Shown here in pieces: positions 1 through 63,380 of a DNA stretch of 64,000 bases. Numbering within the stretch: position 1 is the first letter of the stretch; each line of letters begins with the position of its first letter. The notes beneath the pieces are model-generated. The model made no database searches and was not told the origin of the DNA. It saw only the letters and a program-made list of their open reading frames with translations. The DNA is taken from contig NC_068994.1 of NCBI RefSeq assembly GCF_001194135.2, forward strand, positions 3,939,938 through 4,003,937, written 5' to 3'. The translations under genes were made by a program, and so were the position numbers. Origin of the DNA: Octopus bimaculoides. Lineage: Eukaryota.

Positions 1-168
1 GTATTGTGTGTGTGTGTGTAATTCGAGTTGAGCTCTGTTGGTTCTCTGGCTCTTATTGAATACATGTTTTGGTGGTGGTTTATTTTATTGGATATTTGCT
101 GTATAGAATGTGTCTTGTGTTTGTGGATTGTTTTGTTTGTGTTGTATCATTGAATTGTTTGTGTTGTA

Positions 169-2352: not shown

Positions 2353-2454
2353 AGTGCACTGTGTGACCTGTTTTGTTGAGAAGAGACAATCAGTCGGTCC
2401 GAGCCACATTCTTTAAGACTCCACTAGTTGTTGTTTCATGCTTTCATTATCATC
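2353..2454 (+). other. 5' UTR portion of the ZF-A coding exon
   Basis: Strong acceptor T-tract...CACTGTTTCAG ends at 2352. An in-frame TAG at 2425-2427 precedes the ATG at 2455, which is in a good context (ATC ATG G). Confidence 0.65.
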
Positions 2455-4800
2455 ATGGAGAGGTCTGCCGGGATTCCAATCTATGGTGAAATGTATGGCA
2501 TGCCATTCCATCACAGACTTCCTACACCAAGAATGCCAACCCTTAGTGACTTTTCTGGCAAGCATTTCGGCCAGGAACATGCTCTTGATACTCAGAGGAT
2601 GGCTCCGTTAGGGGGCAAGCAATTTCCTATTCATAGCTCACAGAGTTCTCACTCGCAGCAAAGGATGACACCGATTGCTGAGAAATCCAGCCATCACCAT
2701 AGCAACAGTTCTGGGAAGCACATTCACCATCGACATAGTTCTTCTCATTCACACAGCTCTCAAAGAATGTTAGAACCCGGTGAGAAGTCTATCCATAATA
2801 GCAGCAGTGACTCTGGGAAGCAGTACTCGCATGACACCCACAGGATCTCTCATGTGGCTGAGAAATCTTCCCATAGTTCCGGCAAGCATATGTCTCATGG
2901 AAGTTGTCAGGAGACTCCAAGGATGTCACATGTTCCAGAGAAAAACATTCACAACAGCATCTCTAGTAAACAGATCTCTTCCCACAGACATAACTTGGAG
3001 AAGGAGAGAATAGCATCACCAGTTGACAAACCAGACAACAACAGCAACAGTGACCTGTCTGGGAGCCAGTTCTCCCATGAGTCAACTATAGAGAGCCAGA
3101 GACTGCCACTGCCCTATATTGGTCAGACAGTGTTTCCTGGTAACAATATGTACAGCAGCCAGTATTCTCAGCCGTGTTACTTACCGACGACTGACAGAAT
3201 GCAGTCAAGCTTGGAGAGCGGACAATCATCTAAGGAGAGTTCTTCTCAAAAGAGCTCCACTGCTAGTATTGATAAATCATTCCATGGTGATGTGTCTCAA
3301 AAACAATATGGCCCGAACAAATTGTCGCCAACCCAACCCAAACCACAAGTATTGAGGCAGCTCTTCTGCGATTACTGTGGCAAGAAGTTTGCTCAGGAAT
3401 ATTTGATGCACATGCACCGAAGGAAACATACTGGAGAGAAACCGTTCCAGTGCGACGTCTGCAACAAACAGTTCTCTCGTAAAGATGTTATGAAAAGACA
3501 TAAGAAAAACCATATGGAGGGTCTTGTCCAATCCCCCAAAGTTCTTGGAAACAGCTACCAAGTTCCTATGCAAGAGAATTCTCAGATGGCAAAAAAACAG
3601 TTTACGCCTGATAAACTATTTCAATGTGATGTATGCATGAAATATTTCGGTACAAGGAATTATCTTGAAATTCACAAGAGAACTCATACTGGAGAGAAAC
3701 CATTCCAATGTGACTTCTGTATCCAAAAATTTGCTCGAAGAGACACGCTTCAAATCCATCGGCGCACCCATACCGGAGAGATGCCATTCCAATGTGAAGT
3801 CTGTCAAGAGAGATTTTCACAGCGAATAAAACTTCAGATTCATCAGAAAACACACATTTTGAAGAAACGGCACCAATGCGAATTTTGTCTGAAGCACTTT
3901 GCACAAAGATATTACCTTCAGATCCATCGACGACTGCACACCGGTGAGAAACTGATGCACTGCGACATTTGCTTGAAGAAATTCACTCAAAAACATTACT
4001 TAATCATTCACAGGAGAACCCACACGGGAGAAAAACCATTCCAGTGTGACTTCTGCATTCAGAAATTTGCTCGCAAAACAACTCTTCAAATTCACCGGAG
4101 AACTCACACGGGGGAAAAACCATTCCATTGTGAGATTTGTGACAAGAGGTTCGCTCAGAGCGATAAGTTGAGAGTTCATCGTCGCACCCATGCACCGAAG
4201 CGTCAGTACCAATGCGATATTTGTTTAAAGATGTTTGCCCAAAGACATTACCTTCATGTCCATCAGAGGTCTCACACCGGAGAGAAACCGTTCCAATGTG
4301 AAGTTTGTTTCAAACAGTTTGCTCAGAGAAACACATTACAGATACACAAGAGAACACACACAGGAGAGAAACCATTCCAGTGTGACGTCTGCCTCAAGAA
4401 CTTTGCCCATAAACATTATCTAAGATTACATAAGAGAACGCACACTGGAGAGAAACCATTTCAATGTGACTTCTGCCTGAAGCAGTTTGCTCAGAAAAAT
4501 TCTTTGAAGATCCATTGTCGAACACACACTGGTGAGAAACCGTATCAGTGTGAGATATGCTTCAAGTCTTTTGCTCAAAGACAATACCTGCGATTGCACA
4601 AAATAACACACAGTGGAGAGAAAGCTTATCATTGTGATATGTGCCCAAAACAGTTCACACGAGGTGATACTCTGCAGAGACACAAGAAAACTCACAATGG
4701 ACCCCAACCAAGCAGTAAACCTCACAAAGTGTCTGTTAATTCCAACAATAAAACAATTGAAGAGTTTCCACCAATGAGCACATACCTATGGCAGCTGTAG
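2455..4800 (+). CDS. C2H2 zinc-finger protein ZF-A: 781 aa, Ser/His-rich N-terminus, 2+13 fingers
   Basis: Uninterrupted ORF with 15 C-x2-C-x12-H-x3-H motifs and mostly TGEKPF linkers. The first in-frame ATG is 2455; the ORF track start at 2428 is a TTG. Confidence 0.95.
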   Translation: MERSAGIPIYGEMYGMPFHHRLPTPRMPTLSDFSGKHFGQEHALDTQRMAPLGGKQFPIHSSQSSHSQQRMTPIAEKSSHHHSNSSGKHIHHRHSSSHSHSSQRMLEPGEKSIHNSSSDSGKQYSHDTHRISHVAEKSSHSSGKHMSHGSCQETPRMSHVPEKNIHNSISSKQISSHRHNLEKERIASPVDKPDNNSNSDLSGSQFSHESTIESQRLPLPYIGQTVFPGNNMYSSQYSQPCYLPTTDRMQSSLESGQSSKESSSQKSSTASIDKSFHGDVSQKQYGPNKLSPTQPKPQVLRQLFCDYCGKKFAQEYLMHMHRRKHTGEKPFQCDVCNKQFSRKDVMKRHKKNHMEGLVQSPKVLGNSYQVPMQENSQMAKKQFTPDKLFQCDVCMKYFGTRNYLEIHKRTHTGEKPFQCDFCIQKFARRDTLQIHRRTHTGEMPFQCEVCQERFSQRIKLQIHQKTHILKKRHQCEFCLKHFAQRYYLQIHRRLHTGEKLMHCDICLKKFTQKHYLIIHRRTHTGEKPFQCDFCIQKFARKTTLQIHRRTHTGEKPFHCEICDKRFAQSDKLRVHRRTHAPKRQYQCDICLKMFAQRHYLHVHQRSHTGEKPFQCEVCFKQFAQRNTLQIHKRTHTGEKPFQCDVCLKNFAHKHYLRLHKRTHTGEKPFQCDFCLKQFAQKNSLKIHCRTHTGEKPYQCEICFKSFAQRQYLRLHKITHSGEKAYHCDMCPKQFTRGDTLQRHKKTHNGPQPSSKPHKVSVNSNNKTIEEFPPMSTYLWQL

Positions 4801-9548: not shown

Positions 9549-10044
9549 TTATTTATATACACATTTATGCAGAAACACAGACACTCTAAACGTACAGATC
9601 TGATGTGACTATGACAGTGGTGGCCCCTGACTGCACCAATCTCCTGTCTTTGTTGTTGGTAAGTGAAGACTGTGTATTCATGTGTATACCTACATACACA
9701 CACACACACACTCTCTCTTTCTCCTCCCTCCCCTCGACTGATCAATCGACTCATCTAATGTAACATGCTTTTCATATAAGTTCATAGTTTTAATGTGTGT
9801 CATTCTTTTATTTTTGTCCGTTTTACCATTTTTACATATATCAAATCAAATGCAAGCTACTTTGTTAATACTAATTATCATTACTATTATTATTATTATT
9901 ATTATTATTATTATCATCATCATCATACTAAAGTACTAGTCTTGTACTAGGATCGGTGAAATGAGCTGAGCCTCCCCTTCAAATTTGTGACTTTCTAAGC
10001 CAGGCATGACTATTATTGCTATTATATTTTATGTAGATGGGAGG

Positions 10045-11735
10045 GGGAGCTGGCAGAACTGGTAGAGCATCAGAAAAAACGCCGTATGGTATTTATTCTG
10101 ACCCTCTGTGTTCTGAGTTCAGTTTCCACCAAAGTCAAACATTGCCTTTCACCTTTTAGGGCTAATAAAATAAAATTACTGGTCAAGTACTGGCATTTCA
10201 ACTCACTCCCTGGTCTCAGAATTGCTGACCCCGTAACCAAGCCTGAAACCATTATTATTCTGGCAGCAAACTGGAAGAATTATTAAAATCTTTGGACAAA
10301 ATGCCTTGTGGTATTTCTTCCAGTTCTTCACATCCTGAGTTCAAATTCCTCCGAGGTCGACTTTTCCTTTCGTCCTTTTGGGGGTCAATGAAATAAGTAC
10401 CAGTTGAGTACTGGGGTTAATGTAATCAACTCACTGCCTTTCCCTGAAATTGCTGGCCTTGTGCCAAAATTTGAAACCAGTATAATTATCATCATCATCA
10501 TCATCATCCTGGGTCAATCGAATCAACTCCTACTGATGAAAAGGTGTGGCCTTGTGCCAAGGTTTGCAATCAAGATCAGTGGCAGAGACAGTATTAATCA
10601 GTTTCATTTCTCCCCCCCCCCCCCGGTATCATTTCAATTTCTGCCAACTTTGACTTTTCCTTTATTGCACTCCCTTGGCTAAAAGAAGGTTTTCACTGAA
10701 ATAAAGACAAAAACCATATACTGTGTGTGTGTGTGGGGGGGGGAGCACTTCTCAATTCACTGCTACTGGACTACCTTCCTTGTAAGTTTGTAGTTCTGAT
10801 CCAATTCACAAATTCATCATCATCATCATCTTTAGAGGATGTGATTTGGTTTAAAAAACAAAAAAAAGCTACAATTCCAAACTGGAAGAAGACATTGAAC
10901 ATGGTTTTCTGGCTGCCTTTTTTTTGATATCCCAAACTCTCTCTCCCCTCCCCCCTCTCTCTTGTCAATTTTCTTTTCTTATCCCCATAAGTGATTGTTG
11001 GGTGATACAGTTAAATTACCAGTAAGATACTGAGGCCAATGGAAGAAAACATACTGCTAGTTGCTCCCTTCATAAATTGGTTGATATATATACACATATA
11101 TAAACCCAGTTTAAAGACATCACAACAACATTATTACTGGCAGAGCTGGAGATATTCTGAGTTCAAAATCTGCCTAAGGTCAAAATTAGCTTTTATTCAT
11201 TGGAGGGTTGATAAAATACATTCAAGTACTGGGGCCAGTGTGATTGACTTGCTCGTCCCTTCAAAATAGTGGAAGGGAGGGGCCAAAATTAGAAAGAATG
11301 AGAATTAATAAATGCAATTTAAAATCAGCAGATAAAGTGTCTGTGTTCTGAGTTCAACTCCTCCCTGGGCCAACTTTGCCTTTTATCCTTCAGAGAGAGA
11401 GTGTGTGTGTGTGAGAGAAGGTACAGTGGTCATTATAATGGATTACACCTGCCCCTAAAATTGTTGCTTCATGTCTAATTATAAATGAGCAAATAAGAAA
11501 AATCATAATCGTTATAATTAAGGTGGTGAACTGGAAGAACCGTTTAGCATAAGGCTTAGAGGCTTTTTGTCTGTCTTGACATTCCGAGTTCAACTTCCAC
11601 CGAGGTTGACTTTGCCTTTCATCCTTTTGGGGTCGATAAAATAAGTACCAGTTGAACACTGGGGGTCAATGTAATCGACAGCCCCTTCCCCCAAAATTTC
11701 TGGCCTTGTGCCAAAATTTGAAACCATTATTATTA
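10045..11735 (+). mobile_element. cluster of same-strand tRNA-derived SINE family B copies and fragments
   Basis: Repeated GAGCTGGCAGAA..GAGTTCAAATTCC..GAGGTCGACTTTGCCTTTCATCC..TAAGTACCAGT..GGCCTTGTGCCAAAATTTGAAACC at about 10045-10200, 10260-10490, 11140-11290, 11330-11390 and 11520-11735, separated by (ATT)n/(ATC)n. Confidence 0.8.
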
Positions 11736-21613: not shown

Positions 21614-23197
21614 ATGTATTCGGCCCAGTCCAATGATAACTGCTTTGAGAATTGTGGAGGTGGAGGCCATAATCACTCTCAGTCTTTTTCACCACCAAAT
21701 GGCCATCACCACCACCATCATCACCACCACCATCACCATCACAACAACAACAACAATGGCTCGTTCATGTTTAAACCAAAAGGTAACGAAGCCCGAGACA
21801 AGCCGTTCAAATGTGATATCTGTCGTAAAGGTTTCACACTGAAAGCCTACCTGCAACGGCACCAGATGGCGCCAGAAGCTGGCAAACATTTCAACTGTAA
21901 CTTCTGCAGCAAAGTGTTTCCACAGCGAGACAGGTTAGAGAAACACGAGAGGACGCACACAGGTGAGAAGCCCTTTACCTGTGACATTTGCTCCAAGTCA
22001 TTCTCACAGAAGTCTCACCTGAACACACACAAAATGGTTCACCAGGGAATTAAACCAGCCAACCGTGTGAAACACAAGACCCTTCACAACCATTCTAGCA
22101 ACATGGCAATGATGGTTCCTCGAAAGCAGTTTCATAACCACGCCCACAATCATGGTCACACCCATACACACAACCACAGTCATAATCATGGCCACACCCA
22201 CTCTCACAACCATGGCCACACCCACAACCACGCCCACAACCATGGCCACAACCACAATCACAACCACAGTCACGGCCATTTTCACGGAAGCAATGTGTCG
22301 TTCCAGAATAGCGGACACTTTAACTCCAAAGCATTCCCGATTAACAGAGGAAATGAAGCTCGAGACAAGCCCTTTAAATGTGATGTATGTCGCAAGGGTT
22401 TTACTTTGAAGGCCTACCTACTCAGGCACCAACTTGCCCCTGAAACTGGCAAACACTTCCCTTGTCCGTTTTGCAGCAAAGTCTTCCCACAGAGGGACCG
22501 TCTTGAAAACCACCAAAGAACACACACCGGAGAGAAACCGTTCACGTGTAACCTTTGTGGGAAAAGTTTTGCGCAAAAGTCCCACCTGAATACACACAAG
22601 CACACACACAGTGGCGAGAAACCACACCAGTGTCCCATTTGTAATAAGTCTTTTGCCCAGAAGGACCACTTAAACAAGCACAGACGAACTCACACTGGCG
22701 AGAAACCTTTCCAGTGTACAATTTGTCTGAAAACCTTCTCCCAGAAGACCCACCTGAAGCAGCACAGTCGCATTCATGTCGGGGAAGAATTCTCTCAGTC
22801 CATGGGCCACAACCATCATCATCATCATGTCCATAATCATACCCAGCACCAAAACCATCACACCAACAGCAGCCCTTCGGAGTCTCAAATGACTGCTGAT
22901 AGTGGCCATGGAAACAAGCAGCAAACATCAGCCCTTGTGTCCAGTGGTGGTGGTGGTGGGACTACGACCCACCACCAGATGGCAGCCAGCTCTAGTTCGG
23001 CATCGACCTCGTCTGGGACAGCATCAACCCATCATTCATCGTCAATGAGGAAACAGCAACCACAGCACTCGGCTACGTCACCGTCTCCCACTGTCGTCAC
23101 ATCGGGGACCCTAGCTTCCAATTCTTGCTCTCATCAGATGACGCAGTCTTCATCATCACAGCATGCCGCTCCGCCACCGCCACCTCCAAGGAAGCAA

Positions 23198-23245
<48 letters not shown>

Positions 23246-23686
23246 CAGCCTCCCCCGCCACCACCACCGCAACAGCAACAACAACAACAACAGGCTCAAC
23301 ATCACCATCATCATCAACAGCAGTCCACACCATCGTCTTCCCCATCTTCATCGTGTCAAATGATGTCCCAACATCAAGCAGGACTCCGCAAATCGTCATC
23401 CTCATCGTCATCAATGTCTCCCGCAGCCTGTTCCCACCAGATGATGTCTCAACACGCTTCCATACGGCAGCAACCAGCCACTGTAGCATCGGCATCGATG
23501 AACTCCACATCTCCCCATCAACTTCCACAGAGACCTGACAATAACTACTGGAAACGCAGCTTCCCAGTTACCACAGGCTGGAACTCGGGTTGGTCCAACC
23601 AACCAGCTACCACAACGTATGGTGTCGGGCAAAGAAAGTGCGAGAGCCAAGAGGCTGTACGCTACATTCAGACTCTTTTACAATAA
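21614..23686 (+). CDS. C2H2 zinc-finger protein ZF-B: 690 aa, duplicated 3-finger module, (HX)26 tract, polyH/polyQ/polyP/Ser-rich C-terminus
   Basis: Uninterrupted ORF with ATG in GAA ATG T. Acceptor ...CTCCAAATTTTAG ends at 21585 (alternative AG at 21591). Six canonical fingers with TGEKP/SGEKP linkers plus two fingers lacking the second His. Confidence 0.93.
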
Positions 23687-35832: not shown

Positions 35833-36257
35833 CAAATAAGAAAAACATTTGTGTGGTTCAATGAAGAAGAAGAAGTGAATCAATGCTGATGTCTCTCGTA
35901 ATGTATCCATTATGAACGGTCACCTCTTTAGTAAGAGGTGCAGGGTTCAATTTCCATTCGAGGACAGGATCGCATTTTTATTTTAGAAATGTATTGTTCA
36001 CAAATGTTTATCGATATGTGTGTATCGATGTGTATATATAAGTAGACACACTCAAGCACATATATGCATATATATACACATATACGTGTGTGTATATATA
36101 TGCATATATATATATATTATATATGTAACATATACATATACACCCACACATATTTCGAGCTAATTATAATAACCTGGTTCGTGTATATGTGTATGCATAC
36201 ACATATACATGTATGTACACATGCATATATACATATGTTTACTTACTCATGAAATGC

Positions 36258-37467
36258 TCATCCTTTCGGCGGAGGAGCCTTGTTCTGCTCCTGCGCCGCC
36301 GGTCCCCTGTTGTGAGTGCGTTCATGAACCTTCAGATTAGTCTGGTGAGCAAAACCTTTGTTACAAACCGTGCACGTGAACGTCTTGGCAGCTTCACCGG
36401 TGTGTAGCCTTTCGTGGCACTTCAGGTTGGTCTGATGGCTGAACGCATTCTCGCAGTACGCGCACTGGTAAGGTTTTTCACCTGTATGAGTTCTTTCATG
36501 ATCTCTCAGGTTCGTTTGGTGACTGAACGCTTTTGTGCAGAAACGACACTGATATGGTCGTACGCCTGTATGTGTTCTTTCGTGATCTCGCAGGTTAGTC
36601 TGATGGCTGAACGCATTCTGACAGTAGGAACAACTATAAGGTTTCTCGCCTGTGTGGGTCCTTTGGTGGTCCTTTAAATTCGTCTGGTGACTGAATGCTT
36701 TATCACAGTATGTACACTGAAAGGGTTTCACGCCGGTGTGGGTCCTTTCGTGGTCTTTGAGATTCGTCTGATGGCTGAAGGCCTTGTCGCAATAACTACA
36801 TCTATAGGGCTTGATACCAGTATGGATCCGCTGATGGTCCTTCAGGTTTGTCTGATGAGAAAACGCTTTACCACAGTATCCACAGTGGTACGGCTTGCAG
36901 CCCGTGTGCGTGCGCTCGTGGCTCTTCAGGTTGGTTTGGTGCGAGAAAGCCTTACTACATACGATGCACTTGAAAGGTTTTTCGCCAGTGTGTAAACGGA
37001 GATGTGATTTCAGGTTGGTCTGGTGCGCAAACATTTTCTCGCAGTAAACACATCGGAACGGTTTCTCGCCGGTGTGTGTGCGTAAATGGTCCTTGAGTCG
37101 AGCACGGATGGGGAATGCTTTACGGCAAAACGAACAATAGAAGTGCTTGCCATCGTCGTTCAGCGTAGCAGCATGCTGGTGATTCAGCAGGTCCGAACGT
37201 CGAGTGAAAGTTTTACGGCAAACGTCACACTTATGTTGCTTCTCCTCTTTCTCACTACTTGTTGGGTGGCGTTTGATCATCATCATGTTCATGGCCGCAT
37301 GCATGGTATGCATGGTGTGGATTGCATTCATGTTCATACCGACCATGCTGGCGTTCACTATCATGCCTGATGGCATACTCATATTCATTGTAGTGGCTGC
37401 AGAACTTGTCGAAGGCGGCTGTGGGTGGGGTGCTTGTTGTTGTTGCTGTTGCTGTTGCTGCTGCTGT

Positions 37468-37511
<44 letters not shown>

Positions 37512-37532
37512 CTGCTGTTGTTGTTGTTGTTG

Positions 37533-37563
<31 letters not shown>

Positions 37564-38213
37564 TGTTGTTGTTGTTGCTGTTGCGGGGGAGGAGGGGCTA
37601 TGTTTACATTGCTTGTGATGCTCGTGGCTGGCGGCATGTTCGCAGCGGTGTTAGGACTCGGTCCGAGGTTTACGTTGAGGCCCGGGTTAACATTTGTGTT
37701 CATGTTTGTGTTGTTCAAACCAACACCAAGGCCCTTACCACTGGTCCCACCAACACCACCTCCCGAATGAAGGGCATTCTGGTTAACCCCTCCAATATGC
37801 CCGTGGTGATGGTGGTGGTGATGATGATGATGTTGGTGGTTGCCAGTGCCTCCGCCGCCGGCACCGCCTCCACTACCACTGCAGTTGGTGTGTCGGGCGT
37901 GACTGTGGGCATGGTGGTCATGGTGCCCACCGTGGGCGTGGCTGTGGGCGTGACTGTGAGCATGGTGTGTGTGCCCAGCAGAAGGGTGTGGCCCCTTCAG
38001 TAAGTTGTCCCTGTAGAACACGTCGTTGCCTCTCATGTGTTCCATGCTGGTCGTCTGTCTACCGACATTCGTGCCACCACTGCTGTTGGTGACACGGTTC
38101 CCTGCGCCACCCCTTCCACCACTGCTGCTTGTATCTTGCCCTGCATTGGGATTATTTCCAGGGGGAACTAAACCAGTCCCAGAAGATGAATACATAGGTT
38201 GTAATGACTCCAT
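36258..38213 (-). CDS. C2H2 zinc-finger protein ZF-C: 651 aa, Gly/His/Asn-rich N-terminus, Q50, 1 atypical plus 10 canonical fingers
   Basis: Uninterrupted ORF. Acceptor TTTCCCCTCACCTCACCAAATTCTACAG lies one base before the ATG, so a short coding extension from an upstream exon cannot be excluded. Confidence 0.94.
37434..37583 (-). repeat. coding (CAA/CAG)50 polyglutamine tract of ZF-C
   Basis: 150 nt of mixed CAA/CAG codons between PPPP and APHPQ. Confidence 0.9.
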
Positions 38214-54399: not shown

Positions 54400-57300
54400 C
54401 ATACCCCCACCCCCACAACACCACCGCCGCCGCCGCCGCTCCATCCACCCAGCGCACGAACATATCTCCAGCATCAACTCCNNNNNNNNNNTACTACTAC
54501 TACTGCCACACAACACTCGCACCCCCCCGCCTCCTCGTACCATCGCTGTCAGCTACTGCCTCTACCATCACTATCGCATTAACAACCAGTATTACCACCA
54601 CCACCACCACCACCGCCGCCGCCGCCGCTCCATCCACCCAGCGCACGAACATATCTCCAGCATCAACTCCATCATCACCATTATCGTTTCACTATGACTA
54701 CCAACGCCACCACCACCTCCGCCACTCGCATAATTCTCTTCTTCACTGTGACTACCACCACCACCACCACCATCACCACCATCACCGTTATCTTACGCTA
54801 TGGCTACTACCCCCAGCCTCACCACCACCACCACCACCACCACTACTGTTATCGTTATTTTCATTATGACTACCGCCGCCGCCACCACCAGCACCAGCAC
54901 CACCACCACCGTCTTCACTATGACTACCAGTATCACCACCGTTATGTTAACCACCACCACCACTACCACCGCCGCCGCCGTCGCCGCCACCATCACGAAT
55001 AAAGACGCTACTAACAGCAACTAATAATACACAGCAACATCAGAAAAAAACATAACAGCGATATCATCATCATCATCATCATCATCATCACCGACAACAC
55101 AAACTGCACTGAGAAAACGGCAGCGATATTAACTTCACCACCACCACCACCACCATCATCATCAACAATAGCATCATCATCATCAACCATAAGCGTAATC
55201 ATTGTCATAGCCATCATCATCGCCATATTCATCATGAACAACAACTGCACTAACAAAACAGCAGCAGCAACATTAACTTCCTCGCCGCCGCCGCCGCCAC
55301 CATCATCATCGACAATAGCATCATCATCGTCGTCATCATCATCGTCATCATCATTATTGCTGTCGTAGTCATATTCAGCAGCAGTCATAGCAGCAGTAGC
55401 ATCACCATCATCACAATCACAATCCTCATCAACACAATCGTTGTCATTGTTGTCCCCCCCCCCTTCGACTTCCCCCTCCTCTTCATCACCATCATCATCG
55501 TCATCATCAAAAAACAACACCTGCAATAACAAAACAACAACAACAACAACAGCAGTAGTTACAATAAAACTAAGCAGTGACTTGGCTGAGTTGTTAGAGT
55601 GTTGGGCAAAATACGTTGGTTCTGGTTCTGTGCATTCTGGGTTCGAACCCTGATAAAGACAACTTTACCTTTTTATCCCTTCAGGGCCAATAAATAAGAT
55701 ACCCGTCTAAAACCAGGGATTGCAAGAATTTTTAGAGTGTTGAATAGAGATACCTTTTGATATTTACTGCGGCCCTTTTGTGTCTTGAGTTCCTGAGTGG
55801 TGGATTTANNNNNNNNNNNNNNNNNNNNNNNNNNNNNNNNNNNNNNNNNNNNNNNNNNNNNNNNNNNNNNNNNNNNNNNNNNNNNNNNNNNNNNNNNNNN
55901 NNNNNNNNNNNNNNNNNNNNNNNNNNNNNNNNNNNNNNNNNNNNNNNNNNNNNNNNNNNNNNNNNNNNNNNNNNNNNNNNNNNNNNNNNNNNNNNNNNNN
56001 NNNNNNNNNNNNNNNNNNNNNNNNNNNNNNNNNNNNNNNNNNNNNNNNNNNNNNNNNNNNNNNNNNNNNNNNNNNNNNNNNNNNNNNNNNNNNNNNNNNN
56101 NNNNNNNNNNNNNNNNNNNNNNNNNNNNNNNNNNNNNNNNNNNNNNNNNNNNNNNNNNNNNNNNNNNNNNNNNNNNNNNNNNNNNNNNNNNNNNNNNNNN
56201 NNNNNNNNNNNNNNNNNNNNNNNNNNNNNNNNNNNNNNNNNNNNNNNNNNNNNNNNNNNNNNNNNNNNNNNNNNNNNNNNNNNNNNNNNNNNNNNNNNNN
56301 NNNNNNNNNNNNNNNNNNNNNNNNNNNNNNNNNNNNNNNNNNNNNNNNNNNNNNNNNNNNNNNNNNNNNNNNNNNNNNNNNNNNNNNNNNNNNNNNNNNN
56401 NNNNNNNNNNNNGACGACAACCACCACCACCACCACCACCACTACTACCGCCACAACCACCGCTACCACACTGATAACCACCATCACCCCACCCCCACCA
56501 CCACCACTACCATTACCACCTGTACCCTCTCCACCATGACCACTACCAGCGTCCACCACTACCGCCACTACTACTACCACCATCACCATCACCACCACCA
56601 CTACCTTCACTACTACCTCTATCACCACCATCACAACTACCATGACGATGACAAGAACTATCACCACCACCACTACCACCTGTACCATCTGCAACAACAT
56701 GACCACCACTAACACCCACCATCACTACCACCGCCACCACGTCTTCCGTCACTACTACCAACAGCAACAATACAAACTTCACTCATCACTGATATCTTAA
56801 AACATAAAAGACACCAACACTACCACCACCACCACCACAACAGCAAGAACATCACTACCACCACCATCACCACAACATCAGTCCTACTACAGCACAAACA
56901 CCCATTCCACAAACGCTACTACCACTATTGTCATCACCACAAGACTACTACAACACAAACAACTACTTCACAAACATTACAACAACCACCACCACTACAA
57001 CACCAACATCTACGACTACCACTACTACTACTACTACTACTATTGCTGCTGCTGCTGCTGCTACTACTCTCACAACTTTAGCACAAACAGCCACTAACAC
57101 CAGTGAATGACCACCACAACAGTGGTTGCTTGACCTGCTGGAAAAAGTAGCAAAGTCCACCTCCCATCACACCTGTACTATCTTCTGAAAGGAAGGACAC
57201 CTCAGACTGGATGCTGTCTGTGTCTGGAAAGATTTTTTAAAAGGGGGGGGGGGGGTGATTGCAACCCCTTTTGTTGTAGAACCTGTATGAGGAGCAGGAC

Positions 57301-58318
57301 TGACCCGGGGTTACACAACAGCTAACAGTGCAAAAATAAAGAAAAAACAACAAAAAAAGCAACTAAAATTAAAATTTAAAAAAATACGATTTGAACAGTT
57401 TTTCATATAAAAAAAATTGACAAAATATATCCATCCTCCTCATCATCATCATCATTATTGTCAACATCAAGGCCATCGTCACCCCCTCCACCCCCAATGA
57501 CACCTCTGCTGTCACTATCATCATCATCATCATCATTGTTATTGCTATAATCAATATCTTCATTATTAACATTGTTATTGTCATCATCATCACCATCATC
57601 ATTATCATCATCATCAGCATCAACTTCGCCACCACCACCACTATCACTACCATCACCACCATCGTCATCATCGTCACCATCATCATATTCACCACACCCA
57701 CCTGATCCTCACCGCCCTCCTCCTCCTCCTCCTCATCGTCATTAATCTAATACCATCTCTGCCATTATTTATTTCCACCTAGTCCTTAACCATCATCATC
57801 ATCATCATCACTATAGTCACCATTGAAACCCCCACACCACCCCTCCACCACCACCAATAACAACAGCCAATACCACCCCCTCCACCACCACCACCATCAT
57901 CATCATCATCACACAGTAATTATCCTCCCTGCTGGAGCTTCTATGGGTGTCACTCTTCTAGAAATAGCAGCCAAATCTCCTTCATACCACACCTTGCTAA
58001 CTTAGAAGGAAGGACACATTGGATAATAGAGTGCTACATGCACTTATGCACGTGGGACAAGGCAGGGTGGTCATAACTGGATACCTTTGTTCGTGGGCCT
58101 GGAACTAAATAACAACAACAACCGCTATCACTACCATCATACCATCAGCACCAATAACAACACCATCATCATCATCAACATCATCACCATCATCATCCTC
58201 GTCATCATCATCATCATCATCATTCTCGTCGTCATCATCATCATCCTCCTCCTCGTCATCATCATCATCATCGTCATCATCATCATCATCATCCTCCTCG
58301 TCATCATCATCATCGTCG

Positions 58319-58349
<31 letters not shown>

Positions 58350-59150
58350 CGTCGTCATCATCATCATCATCATCACCATCATCGTCGTCGTCGTCATCAC
58401 CATCATCATCATCGTCATCCTCGTCATCATCATCATCATCGTCATCATCATCATCATCGTCGTCGTCGTCATCACCATCATCGTCGTCATCACCATCATC
58501 ATCACCATCATCATCATCGTCATCATCATAGTCATACATTATCGTCATCATAATAGCCACTGATTTATCAGCAGCAGCAGTAATTTCCTCGTATCGCATT
58601 ATCATCATCAAGATGATGATAATGAGTAATCATGATGATCACCATCATCATAATCATCATCATCATCGTCATCACATTACTCAATACCTACCATCTTTAT
58701 CATCATCATCATCATCATCATCCTCTTATCATCATCATTATAATCATTATAACCACCACCACCGCCGCCGCCGCCACCGCCACCATCATCGCCGTCGTCC
58801 TGATTAGCATTCTTATAATGACCATAAATGATTGTAATCCCCATCATTGTAAACATGTTTTTCGTCATCACTAATCCTCTTCTCTCTTCTAACCACCACC
58901 ACAACCATTAATATGGTCTACCACCACCACTATCACCACGATCGCTACTACAACCATTGTGTCACCGAGTCCACTACCACTACCACTACCACCACCGCCG
59001 CCGACAGCGTCACCATCAAGATGTCCATCACTCTGTCCACTGCCATCATTGCATCAACGTTTCCGCCACAACCAACATCACCACCATCACTAATTATTCG
59101 TTATTACCCAAGGGTTGTTATAATCTTAATAAAACAGTCCCCCAAAAAAT
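54400..59150. repeat. compound trinucleotide low-complexity field: (CAC)n, (CAT)n, (CCG)n, (TAC)n
   Basis: Directly visible; interrupted by gaps (54482-54491, 55809-56412) and SINE fragments. Confidence 0.9.
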
Positions 59151-60019: not shown

Positions 60020-61596
60020 NNNNNNNNNNNNNNNNNNNNNNNNNNNNNNNNNNNNNNNNNNNNNNNNNNNNNNNNNNNNNNNNNNNNNNNNNNNNNNNNN
60101 NNNNNNNNNNNNNNNNNNNNNNNNNNNNNNNNNNNNNNNNNNNNNNNNNNNNNNNNNNNNNNNNNNNNNNNNNNNNNNNNNNNNNNNNNNNNNNNNNNNN
60201 NNNNNNNNNNNNNNNNNNNNNNNNNNNNNNNNNNNNNNNNNNNNNNNNNNNNNNNNNNNNNNNNNNNNNNNNNNNNNNNNNNNNNNNNNNNNNNNNNNNN
60301 NNNNNNNNNNNNNNNNNNNNNNNNNNNNNNNNNNNNNNNNNNNNNNNNNNNNNNNNNNNNNNNNNNNNNNNNNNNNNNNNNNNNNNNNNNNNNNNNNNNN
60401 NNNNNNNNNNNNNNNNNNNNNNNNNNNNNNNNNNNNNNNNNNNNNNNNNNNNNNNNNNNATATATATATTATTTTCTGAGCTTCCCAAAATAAATACCAG
60501 AAATAAATTTCTAGTTGGTATCTATGTAAGAAATCATAAGTCTTATCACATTGACGAAGAGCGATTCTTTACATATGCTGTAACCAATGCCTTGGCAATT
60601 GAAGTCTCTTTAAATCTATCCGTGTCTTCTAATTGCCGATTGTAAGAGACGGTAAAATCGAAGTCTCCTTTCTGCCAGAGTATAAAAGTAGACATTGGGA
60701 AGAAAGAAACTAAACGAACTGGTTAAGTGAATGGGCGGGATATGCAGAGCGGAGATGCAAGCAATCAGTCGTTCATTAAAAATATACTTAAAAATGCAAA
60801 AAATAAATAATATATATTTAAAAGAAAAATAATTTAATGTAAACACACGGGCATTTAAAAAGACAAGAAAATAAAAACTCAAAGACAAGAATTAGTTTAA
60901 TTTTCATTAATAATTGCTCCACTTTCTTTTCTGTGAAAGTATCTAGCTGACTTGGTTCGGTTAATTTCCTCCAAACTAACCAGAAATTATATCTACAAAA
61001 CAGCAAGATAAAAAAAACAAAATGAAAGAAATCGAAAGTAGAATTTACCATGATTGTCGGCGGAAGTTGACACCTTAAAACAGCGACACCTGGTGGACAT
61101 AAAATCAATTACTATATTCATTTCTCGATCCAAGTGGGACTGTCATACTTGAAGCATCACTTTATTTTATTAAGATTAAAATATAATGAAGTTTCACTGA
61201 ACACAGAGGGAGAGAGCCGTGTACGGAACGTCACAGTATTCTATTTAGATTACATTACCAAAAAGGTTCTGCAAACACCCATTTTATTGTTGATTCGTGA
61301 GCATTGTTCTGATTTTAAAGGGTTTCATCGAAAAGAAGAAAGATTGCCATAACTGTCTTCAAACACAAACTTTATATAATAAATGCTGGCAACATTTTGT
61401 GTGTGTGTATACATATACGTCATTAAAACCAAAAGGCCCTTAAGTAAGGGGAGATAATTGGAATTCTCTGAAGGCTCATTAACCGTTCGTTGTACGTATA
61501 TGGCCGTCTGCATTTGTGTAATGCATGTGTAGAAGAAAGTGCTTGTATGTGTAAATACAAATGGAGTATGTGTGAGTTGTGGGGGGAAGGGATTGC

Positions 61597-62539: not shown

Positions 62540-63380
62540 NNNNNNNNNNNNNNNNNNNNNNNNNNNNNNNNNNNNNNNNNNNNNNNNNNNNNNNNNNNNN
62601 NNNNNNNNNNNNNNNNNNNNNNNNNNNNNNNNNNNNNNNNNNNNNNNNNNNNNNNNNNNNNNNNNNNNNNNNNNNNNNNNNNNNNNNNNNNNNNNNNNNN
62701 NNNNNNNNNNNNNNNNNNNNNNNNNNNNNNNNNNNNNNNNNNNNNNNNNNNNNNNNNNNNNNNNNNNNNNNNNNNNNNNNNNNNNNNNNNNNNNNNNNNN
62801 NNNNNNNNNNNNNNNNNNNNNNNNNNNNNNNNNNNNNNNNNNNNNNNNNNNNNNNNNNNNNNNNNNNNNNNNNNNNNNNNNNNNNNNNNNNNNNNNNNNN
62901 NNNNNNNNNNNNNNNNNNNNNNNNNNNNNNNNNNNNNNNNNNNNNNNNNNNNNNNNNNNNNNNNNNNNNNNNNNNNNNNNNNNNNNNNNNNNNNNNNNNN
63001 NNNNNNNNNNNNNNNNNNNNNNNNNNNNNNNNNNNNNNNNNNNNNNNNNNNNNNNNNNNNNNNNNNNNNNNNNNNNNNNNNNNNNNNNNNNNNNNNNNNN
63101 NNNNNNNNNNNNNNNNNNNNNNNNNNNNNNNNNNNNNNNNNNNNNNNNNNNNNNNNNNNNNNNNNNNNNNNNNNNNNNNNNNNNNNNNNNNNNNNNNNNN
63201 NNNNNNNNNNNNNNNNNNNNNNNNNNNNNNNNNNNNNNNNNNNNNNNNNNNNNNNNNNNNNNNNNNNNNNNNNNNNNNNNNNNNNNNNNNNNNNNNNNNN
63301 NNNNNNNNNNNNNNNNNNNNNNNNNNNNNNNNNNNNNNNNNNNNNNNNNNNNNNNNNNNNNNNNNNNNNNNNNNNNNNNC

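What the first reader, a model, noticed from the sequence alone, without database searches (positions are those of the whole stretch)
36312..37052. Nine consecutive ZF-C fingers share an invariant HQTNL helix under purifying selection, not recent duplication
Fingers 3-11 all have H(-1) Q T(+2) N(+3) L, with +6 = S,S,D,D,D,D,D,C,V. The underlying codons are heavily diverged: Thr uses ACC, ACC, ACA, ACG, ACG, ACT, ACG, ACC, ACT; His, Gln and Asn use both codons; Leu uses CTG, CTC and TTA. Scaffold and linker residues vary freely (CVYC, CIVC, CGYC, CRFC; TGCKPY, TGIKPY, TGVRPY). This is the reverse of PRDM9-like arrays, where the DNA is homogenised and contact residues vary. An array of identical specificities should read a roughly 27-bp trinucleotide repeat. 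Asn at +3 points to a central A, so (CAT)n, (CAC)n or (TAA)n types are candidates, all abundant here. The target is inference.
Basis: partly seen in the sequence, partly recalled or inferred. Interest (0 to 1): 0.78.

Follow-up and report, generated by a model that had tools for sequence, protein, structure and literature searches.

The report
Nine-finger zinc-finger array, one repeated helix
An intact zinc-finger gene carries nine consecutive fingers with the same DNA-reading helix, kept identical by selection although the underlying DNA has fully diverged, so it probably reads a three-base repeat much as the fly protein Aef1 reads (CAA)n, but its target has not been shown.

Summary
Window 36258..38213 (-) is one uninterrupted 651-codon ORF. 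It encodes a His/Gly/Gln-rich N-terminus, an atypical finger, a 'FPIRARL' finger, and then nine C2H2 fingers (36312..37052) that all carry H(-1) Q T N L(+4).

Synonymous sites between the nine fingers are saturated. The same-codon fraction is 0.423, against 0.419 expected from local codon usage. There is no amino-acid change at the five helix positions in any of the 36 finger pairs. Recent duplication or gene conversion is therefore excluded, and purifying selection on the helix is shown.

The gene belongs to a small unnamed family:
- A paralogue, ZF-B, lies 13 kb away and has its own repeated helix, QKxHL.
- Two 290-aa relatives from unidentified organisms share the start MESLQ, the atypical finger and the FPIRARL finger. 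They have only three fingers (HPSNL, HHSNL, HQTNL), all conserved between the two species.

No protein with more than two HQTNL fingers turned up among billions of sequences, and no cephalopod orthologue could be retrieved.

The proposed function, reading a 3-bp periodic tract, is a reasonable inference with a known precedent in Aef1. A central A is well founded. (CAT)n is my best guess for the repeat, and it is weakly supported. I rate this a new variant of a known kind, of moderate interest.

The parts
36258..38213 (-). Complete single-exon ORF of ZF-C (651 codons plus stop), beginning MESLQPMY
   Evidence: The start MESLQ matches the N-terminus of relatives P0151 and P0152. Pfam zf-C2H2 E=4.3e-49 and zf-H2C2_2 E=4.2e-62, with no KRAB, SCAN, BTB or SET domain.
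36312..37052 (-). Nine consecutive C2H2 fingers (F3-F11), all with helix H(-1) Q T N L(+4). Residues at +6 are S,S,D,D,D,D,D,C,V.
   Evidence: Synonymous saturation is shown and zero helix replacements. AF2 gives beta-beta-alpha folds with pLDDT 85-93 for F3-F5.
37074..37136 (-). Finger F2 with helix I R A R L K D ('FPIRARLKDH'). It is family-specific and conserved.
   Evidence: FPIRARL is identical in P0151 and P0152. ZF-B has FPQRDRL at the same place, and FP.R.RL is invariant across seven aligned sequences.
37143..37229 (-). Atypical finger F1: C-x2-C-x12-H-Q-H-A...G-K-H, with no second His at the usual i+3..5 spacing
   Evidence: H-Q-x-A and K-H-F are invariant in ZF-B, ZF-C and P0151/P0152/P0499/P0500. 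AF2 predicts a hairpin plus helix, with low confidence in the loop.
37434..37583 (-). PolyQ tract of 50 Gln, encoded by (CAR)50
37803..37976 (-). His- and Gly-rich low-complexity N-terminal region
   Evidence: Translation
36375..36401 (-). Linker between F10 and F11 (TGEAAKTFT), two residues longer than the canonical TGEKP-type linkers that join F2 through F10
21614..23686 (+). ZF-B, a paralogue of ZF-C. The atypical-finger plus FPQRDRL module occurs twice, followed by fingers QKSHLNT, QKSHLNT, QKDHLNK and QKTHLKQ (a second repeated helix).

Best explanation
ZF-C is an intact, selectively maintained C2H2 zinc-finger gene from a small, old and so far unnamed family. The family is defined by the start MESLQ, an atypical first finger, an 'FP.R.RL' second finger, and then fingers with H(-1), S/T(+2), N(+3) and L(+4).

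In this genome the array has grown to nine fingers with the identical helix HQTNL. Eight of the junctions in the run F2 to F10 are canonical five-residue linkers. All nine fingers present the same base-contacting residues, so the array should recognise DNA with a strict 3-bp period: a tract of the type (N-A-N)n up to about 27 bp long.

The five central fingers have Asp at +6 and favour one triplet. My best guess is 5'-CAT-3' (second choice CAG), which gives a (CAT)5 core flanked by looser NAT triplets. A protein of this kind can bind in any register, so occupancy should rise with tract length. The Q/H-rich N-terminus would act as the effector part, in activation or self-association.

Shown: the gene structure, the identical helices, the ancient divergence of the units, purifying selection on the helix, and family membership. 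Inferred: DNA binding, the 3-bp periodicity of the site, the identity of the triplet, and the role of the N-terminus.
For: The 651-codon ORF is intact and contains ten canonical fingers. Helices are identical while codons are fully randomised (0.423 observed against 0.419 expected). dN is about 0 at the helix and about 0.5 at other non-ligand positions. The arrangement is rare.

Relatives P0151 and P0152 share the N-terminus, F1 and F2, and have H-x-S/T-N-L in every array finger. Their finger region is 90% identical with saturated synonymous sites. Paralogue ZF-B also has one helix type repeated, so repeating a single helix type (iso-helix arrays) appears to be a family habit.

Canonical linkers and predicted beta-beta-alpha folds support a DNA-binding array. 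The precedent is the four Aef1 fingers, which 'specify a repeating ACA triplet' (PMC3668361) and give a (CAA)n ChIP motif (PMC12322892). Asn(+3) with adenine is a well-defined preference. The design modules TSGNLTE=CAT and HRTTLTN=AGT link acidic +6 with 5'-C and His(-1) with 3'-T (PMC7317221). CAT-class tracts are the commonest trinucleotide repeat in the window.
Against: There are no binding data of any kind. No orthologue of the nine-finger form was found, so retention of nine HQTNL fingers across species is untested. The organism was not verified by me, and the window's proteins are absent from the protein collection.

The same residue at a contact position can specify any of the four bases depending on context (PMC4330361). 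No solved structure among the best PDB matches has an H(-1)/N(+3) helix. Long arrays often use only some of their fingers. The abundance of CAT repeats nearby is not evidence of binding, because all microsatellite classes are abundant here.
Confidence: 0.55

Rival explanations
1. The identical helices result from recent tandem duplication or ongoing gene conversion (concerted evolution), not from selection on the protein.
For: Tandem finger arrays are commonly homogenised in this way, PRDM9 and many KRAB-ZFPs being examples. Leu(+4) uses CTG in 7 of 9 fingers.
Against: Unit nucleotide identity is 54-75%. Codon sharing at conserved residues equals the random expectation (0.423 against 0.419, 629 comparisons). 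Inside the helix itself Thr uses four codons, and His, Gln and Asn each use both of theirs.
Confidence: 0.02
2. The array binds a repetitive RNA or single-stranded nucleic acid, or serves mainly as a protein-protein or self-assembly scaffold, rather than reading double-stranded DNA repeats.
For: Some multi-finger proteins bind RNA. Pfam's dsRNA-type zf-C2H2_jaz model also matches (E=7.6e-21). The Q/H-rich low-complexity N-terminus suggests assembly into condensates. The helix is conserved at +1 and +4 as well, which is more than base contacts alone would require.
Against: The jaz match overlaps the much stronger classical C2H2 matches. TGEKP-type linkers of canonical length are typical of DNA-wrapping arrays. 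The residues at -1, +2 and +3 are the ones held fixed across the family.
Confidence: 0.15
3. The protein binds a specific, non-repetitive DNA site. The site would be set mainly by F1/F2 and by the differences at +6 and in the long F10-F11 linker, and most HQTNL fingers would add only non-specific affinity or spacing.
For: F1 and F2 are the most conserved, family-specific part. Position +6 varies (S,S,D,D,D,D,D,C,V), and the last linker is non-canonical. Long arrays often use subsets of fingers.
Against: Five adjacent fingers are identical at all four contact positions (H,T,N,D), so at least a 15-bp periodic core is expected if they touch DNA at all. Selection has kept every one of the nine helices intact.
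Confidence: 0.18
4. ZF-C is a decaying or non-expressed lineage-specific duplicate whose ORF is still open by chance.
For: The exact protein, and any protein with more than two HQTNL fingers, is absent from about 15 billion predicted proteins, including transcriptome assemblies.
Against: A 1.95-kb open frame in a 38.7% GC genome is unlikely by chance. Every zinc ligand of the ten canonical fingers is intact. The start codon context matches that of the relatives. The window's other proteins are also absent from the collection, which points to an unsampled genome rather than a dead gene.
Confidence: 0.05

Closest known systems
Drosophila Aef1 (Adult enhancer factor 1)
   Same: It is a natural C2H2 protein whose fingers share one specificity and read a trinucleotide repeat: 'a repeating ACA triplet' (PMC3668361) and a (CAA)n ChIP motif (PMC12322892). 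From my own recollection, not checked with a tool, it also has a Gln/His/Ala-rich N-terminus.
   Different: Aef1 has four fingers rather than nine. Its helix differs (recalled as Q-x-S-T-L-x-N, not fetched here). There is no sign of the atypical-finger plus FP.R.RL module that defines the ZF-C family. Homology beyond the generic finger fold was not tested.
PRDM9-type and young KRAB-ZFP arrays
   Same: They are long tandem arrays of canonical C2H2 fingers encoded in one exon. The best PDB sequence matches are ZFP568, Aart and PRDM9.
   Different: The pattern is reversed. In those arrays the DNA is homogenised and the contact residues vary. Here the DNA is saturated with synonymous change and the contact residues are fixed. 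ZF-C has no SET or KRAB domain.
Other simple-repeat-binding zinc-finger proteins (ZSCAN4 on TGCACAC in CA/TG microsatellites, ZBTB43 on purine/pyrimidine dinucleotide repeats, and engineered arrays aimed at GGAA repeats)
   Same: These are C2H2 arrays whose genomic targets are microsatellites (abstracts of PMC10785592, PMC9788570 and PMC9374162).
   Different: They are not reported there as arrays of identical helices. Their domain architectures (SCAN, BTB) are absent here.
Unnamed relatives P0151 (ENA ERZ21867824, 228-kb contig) and P0152/P0499/P0500 (Logan SRR27666071)
   Same: They share the start MESLQ/MDTLQ, the atypical finger ..NHQHA..KHF, the FPIRARL finger, array fingers with H-x-S/T-N-L, and a last finger FSHQTNLKDHERTHTG identical to ZF-C finger F6 over these 16 residues. 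They are also single-exon genes.
   Different: They have only three array fingers, with helices HPSNL, HHSNL and HQTNL. They are about 290 aa long and lack the polyQ and His tracts. The source organisms are unknown, and the locus has 26% GC.

Membership tests
Classical (Krueppel-type) C2H2 zinc-finger array | C-x2-C-x12-H-x3-H motif with conserved Phe and Leu | tested here: met
   Ten matches in one frame. Pfam PF00096 scores 162.6 bits against a cut-off of 25.2.
Classical (Krueppel-type) C2H2 zinc-finger array | TGEKP-type inter-finger linkers of canonical length | tested here: met
   F2-F10 are joined by TGEKP, TGCKP, TGIKP, TGVKP or TGVRP. Only the F10-F11 linker is longer. PF13465 scores 203.5 bits.
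Classical (Krueppel-type) C2H2 zinc-finger array | Beta-beta-alpha fold | tested here: met
   The AF2 model of F1-F5 has mean pLDDT 83.9 and shows five hairpin-helix units.
KRAB / SCAN / BTB zinc-finger proteins | N-terminal KRAB (PF01352), SCAN (PF02023) or BTB domain | tested here: not met
   None of these appears in the Pfam scan at E<=0.01. The N-terminus is low-complexity.
PRDM9-like arrays | PR/SET domain, with a minisatellite-like array homogenised at the DNA level and variable at contact residues | tested here: not met
   There is no SET domain. Unit nucleotide identity is 54-75% with random codon sharing, and the contact residues are fixed.
Aef1-like iso-specific repeat readers (functional kind) | All array fingers present the same contact residues | tested here: met
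   H(-1), T(+2) and N(+3) occur in 9 of 9 fingers, and +6 is identical in the five central fingers.
Aef1-like iso-specific repeat readers (functional kind) | Demonstrated binding to a trinucleotide repeat | not testable with these tools
   This needs SELEX, PBM, B1H or ChIP. For Aef1 it is published.
Aef1 orthology group | Sequence orthology to Drosophila Aef1 beyond the generic finger | not tested
   No Aef1 sequence was available through the tools, so the resemblance is functional and recalled only.
Unnamed MESLQ / atypical-finger family (ZF-B, ZF-C, P0151, P0152) | Atypical first finger with invariant H-Q-x-A ... K-H-F, followed by a finger with FP.R.RL | tested here: met
   Invariant columns in the seven-sequence alignment and in the three-sequence alignment.
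Unnamed MESLQ / atypical-finger family (ZF-B, ZF-C, P0151, P0152) | N-terminal M-E/D-S/T-L-Q start and a single coding exon | tested here: met
   Searches show this for ZF-C, P0151 and P0152. ZF-B instead starts MYSAQ, so this feature is not shared by the paralogue.

The most novel reading that the evidence does not exclude
ZF-B and ZF-C belong to a dedicated family of simple-repeat readers. Each paralogue carries an array of identical-specificity fingers tuned to a different microsatellite class: HQTNL for a C-A-N type repeat and QKxHL for an N-G-A type repeat. The conserved atypical F1/F2 pair would be a shared effector or anchoring module. Microsatellite length in this repeat-rich genome would then be read out directly as transcription-factor occupancy, possibly including the (CAR)50 and CAY-rich tracts inside the genes' own exons.
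Probability: 0.15. Interest if true: 0.75.

Novelty: new variant of a known kind. Interest (0 to 1): 0.5.

Why it matters
Zinc-finger arrays normally diversify their contact residues. An array that has held nine identical helices through enough time to randomise every synonymous site points to a target that is itself periodic. If the target is a trinucleotide microsatellite, this would be the longest natural same-specificity array I know of. It would also give a concrete, testable link between the large C2H2 expansion and the repeat-rich genomes of cephalopods, whose C2H2 binding sites are still an open question (PMC12513265). The helix HQTNLKD would add a natural module to the recognition code, since no His(-1)/Asn(+3) helix turned up among the best-matching solved structures. 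If the target is not periodic, the case would show that strong selection can fix identical helices for reasons other than base reading.

Tried and rejected
1. Orthologue search. Three word-indexed searches of 5.8 billion protein clusters were run: the plain finger region, a linker-masked version, and a full-length masked version. They returned only generic multi-finger proteins plus P0151 and P0152. The tool lists no hit longer than 1.75x the query, which cost one search.

2. Exhaustive HMMER profile search of 1.84 billion representatives. It was swamped by giant arrays of 1000-5800 aa, and none carried HQTNL repeats or the family signature.

3. Metagenome scan with family peptide patterns. 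It gave 80 loci, all generic zinc fingers, and none had NHQxA or FP.R.RL.

4. Exact look-ups of ZF-A, ZF-B, ZF-C and another ORF.

5. Positional orthology of ZF-C fingers to the three fingers of P0151. Identity over 18 non-helix sites is too flat to resolve this. The only hint is the 'KGF' shared by the terminal fingers.

6. Nei-Gojobori dS between fingers. pS exceeds 0.75 and cannot be corrected, so it was replaced by the codon-sharing test.

7. Literature searches for the peptide strings HQTNL, FPIRARL, LTNHQHA and others found nothing relevant.

8. Looking for His(-1) rules or look-up data in PMC4330361. No text statement was found and no supplements are held.

9. PDB search for a solved H(-1)/N(+3) finger. 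None appeared among the best matches.

10. Recent duplication or gene conversion was rejected on the codon data.

Full report
**What is in the sequence**

Window 36258..38213 on the minus strand is one open reading frame of 651 codons. Its product has these parts, in order:
- the start MESLQPMY;
- about 320 residues of low-complexity sequence, including a His/Gly-rich stretch and a run of 50 Gln encoded by (CAR)50 at 37434..37583;
- an atypical finger, C-x2-C-x12-H-Q-H-A...G-K-H, at 37143..37229;
- a canonical finger with the unusual helix I-R-A-R-L-K-D ('FPIRARLKDH', 37074..37136);
- nine canonical C-x2-C-x12-H-x3-H fingers, whose cores occupy exactly 36312..37052.

Pfam sees only classical C2H2 models (PF00096 E=4.3e-49, PF13465 E=4.2e-62) and no KRAB, SCAN, BTB or SET domain. 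An AlphaFold2 model of F1-F5 gives five hairpin-helix units, with pLDDT of about 85-93 over the HQTNL fingers.

**Is it more than chance?**

Two random fingers share a five-residue helix core with probability 9e-4. Among 470 proteins with at least six fingers, a count of nine identical cores appeared once, in a 40-finger protein, and nothing approaches nine of ten. The two other zinc-finger genes in the window do not show the pattern. ZF-A (2428..4800, +) has 15 fingers with 15 different helices.

**Selection or recent duplication?**

The 69-nt finger cores are only 54-75% identical to each other. Nei-Gojobori pS exceeds the correctable range, so I used a direct test instead. For every pair of fingers and every position where both have the same amino acid, I asked how often the codon is also the same.
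- Observed: 0.423 over 629 comparisons.
- Expected from random draws on the codon usage of the three zinc-finger genes in the window: 0.419.

Synonymous sites therefore retain no signal of common descent. Over the same period the five helix residues accumulated no replacement in any of the 36 finger pairs, while the other non-ligand positions reached dN of about 0.5. Gene conversion cannot explain this, because it would homogenise the synonymous sites inside the helix too. There, Thr uses four codons, and His, Gln and Asn each use both of theirs.

**Relatives**

The protein collection does not hold the window's own proteins. Three word-indexed searches, one exhaustive profile search and one metagenome scan found no other protein with more than two HQTNL fingers.

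They did find a family. P0151 (290 aa, on a 228-kb ENA contig with 26% GC locally) and P0152 (293 aa, from a Logan transcript-like contig) have:
- the start MESLQ or MDTLQ;
- the same atypical finger (..LTNHQHA..VKHF);
- the same FPIRARL finger;
- exactly three array fingers with helices HPSNL, HHSNL and HQTNL.

The last of these, FSHQTNLKDHERTHTG, is identical to ZF-C finger F6 over these 16 residues. Between P0151 and P0152 the finger region is 90% identical, while 51% of the identical residues use different codons, and all helices are unchanged. In the only relatives available, then, His(-1), Ser/Thr(+2) and Asn(+3) are kept in every array finger and across species.

**A paralogue in the window**

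ZF-B (21614..23686, +) lies 13 kb away on the other strand. It carries the atypical finger plus an 'FPQRDRL' finger twice. These are followed by fingers QKSHLNT, QKSHLNT, QKDHLNK and QKTHLKQ, which have Gln(-1) and His(+3) throughout. Its two modules are 82% identical in protein, with 53% of identical residues using different codons, so this duplication is also old and constrained. Repeating one helix type therefore seems to be a property of the family, not an oddity of one gene.

**How it most likely works**

In the run F2 to F10, eight canonical five-residue linkers connect nine fingers, and only the F10-F11 linker is two residues longer. If the fingers dock in the major groove in the usual way, identical contact residues imply a site with a strict 3-bp period.

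Asn(+3) with adenine is one of the best-established pairings (PMC3668361), so the middle base should be A. By my own enumeration, a central A excludes only the CCG class among the ten trinucleotide-repeat classes. The choice therefore rests on positions -1 and +6, which are less certain. The design modules TSGNLTE=CAT and HRTTLTN=AGT (PMC7317221) associate an acidic +6 with 5'-C and His(-1) with 3'-T. This gives CAT for the five central fingers and looser NAT for the outer four. CAG is my second choice.

This is weak evidence. The same residue can specify any base depending on context (PMC4330361), and no His(-1)/Asn(+3) finger turned up among the best-matching solved structures. CAT-class tracts are the commonest trinucleotide repeat in the window, with 35 perfect tracts, 18 runs of (CAT)>=5 and a degenerate (CAT)~194 array at 58164..58747. 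All microsatellite classes are abundant here, though, so this shows opportunity rather than binding.

**Comparison with what is known**

The mechanism has a clear precedent. The Drosophila Aef1 fingers 'specify a repeating ACA triplet' (PMC3668361), and Aef1 ChIP peaks give a (CAA)n motif (PMC12322892). ZF-C works like Aef1 on paper, but I did not test orthology, and its defining N-terminal finger pair has no counterpart that I know of in Aef1.

It is the reverse of PRDM9 and young KRAB-ZFP arrays, and it fails their membership tests. Other repeat-binding zinc-finger proteins (ZSCAN4, ZBTB43) have different architectures. The peptide signatures of the family appear nowhere in the searchable literature. 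A 2025 survey of cephalopod C2H2 expansions leaves their binding sites as an open question (PMC12513265).

**Verdict**

The evolutionary interpretation is supported. The functional interpretation is plausible, has a precedent and is untested. I class it as a new variant of a known kind: a same-specificity finger array in a previously undescribed family, more than twice as long as the Aef1 array. I score interest at 0.5. It is a clean, testable case, and it becomes more interesting if ZF-B and further paralogues prove to read other repeat classes.

Noticed in passing
window 21614..23686 (+): ZF-B (690 aa) is a paralogue of ZF-C. The atypical finger plus 'FPQRDRL' finger occurs twice (82% aa identity, 53% of identical residues on different codons). 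These are followed by four fingers that all have Gln(-1) and His(+3) (QKSHLNT x2, QKDHLNK, QKTHLKQ). It also has long His-, Gln- and Pro-rich tracts.
   Followed up: partly
window 2428..4800 (+): ZF-A has 15 canonical fingers whose helices all differ. Position +3 cycles through Y, T and K, which suggests old duplication of multi-finger blocks. The ORF as listed starts at TTG, and the first ATG is at 2455.
   Followed up: no
window 37143..37229 (-); also ZF-B and L001 around 10400-10520: The first finger of the family lacks a second His at the usual spacing (C-x2-C-x12-H-Q-x-A ... K-H-F). H-Q-x-A and K-H-F are invariant in all seven aligned sequences. AF2 still predicts a hairpin plus helix, with low confidence in the loop. 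The fourth zinc ligand is unclear.
   Followed up: partly
window 56420..56740, 57581..57686, 58164..58747: There are long degenerate trinucleotide arrays: (ACC)~107, (TCA)35 and (CAT)~194 (77% matches). Seventeen of the 18 perfect (CAT)>=5 tracts in the window are on the + strand, and most of those listed lie between 55 and 58.4 kb.
   Followed up: partly
window 37434..37583 and 37803..37976 (-): ZF-C's own exon contains (CAR)50 (polyQ) and a CAY-rich His tract. If the fingers read C-A-N triplets, the gene carries candidate sites for its own product. ZF-B has similar tracts at 23195..23248 and 21704..21742.
   Followed up: no
window 36375..36401 (-): The F10-F11 linker (TGEAAKTFT) is two residues longer than the canonical linkers elsewhere in the array. 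This could let the last finger skip a base step or act separately.
   Followed up: no
window 35980..36250: An AT/AC-rich imperfect microsatellite block (TATATACACATA-type) abuts the 3' end of ZF-C. AT (35 tracts) and AC (41 tracts) dinucleotide repeats are frequent across the window.
   Followed up: no
window 55809..56412, 60020..60459, 62540..63379 (and three 10-N runs): Runs of N (assembly gaps) lie inside the repeat-rich right end of the window. ORFs listed there are low-complexity artefacts.
   Followed up: no
L001 (ENA ERZ21867824 ctg119601l) 10001..10873: The relative P0151 sits in a very AT-rich stretch (26% GC, rich in (AT)n) of a 228-kb contig from a 'metagenome' assembly. The contig is evidently eukaryotic and the organism is unknown. 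No second zinc-finger gene lies within 10 kb on either side.
   Followed up: partly
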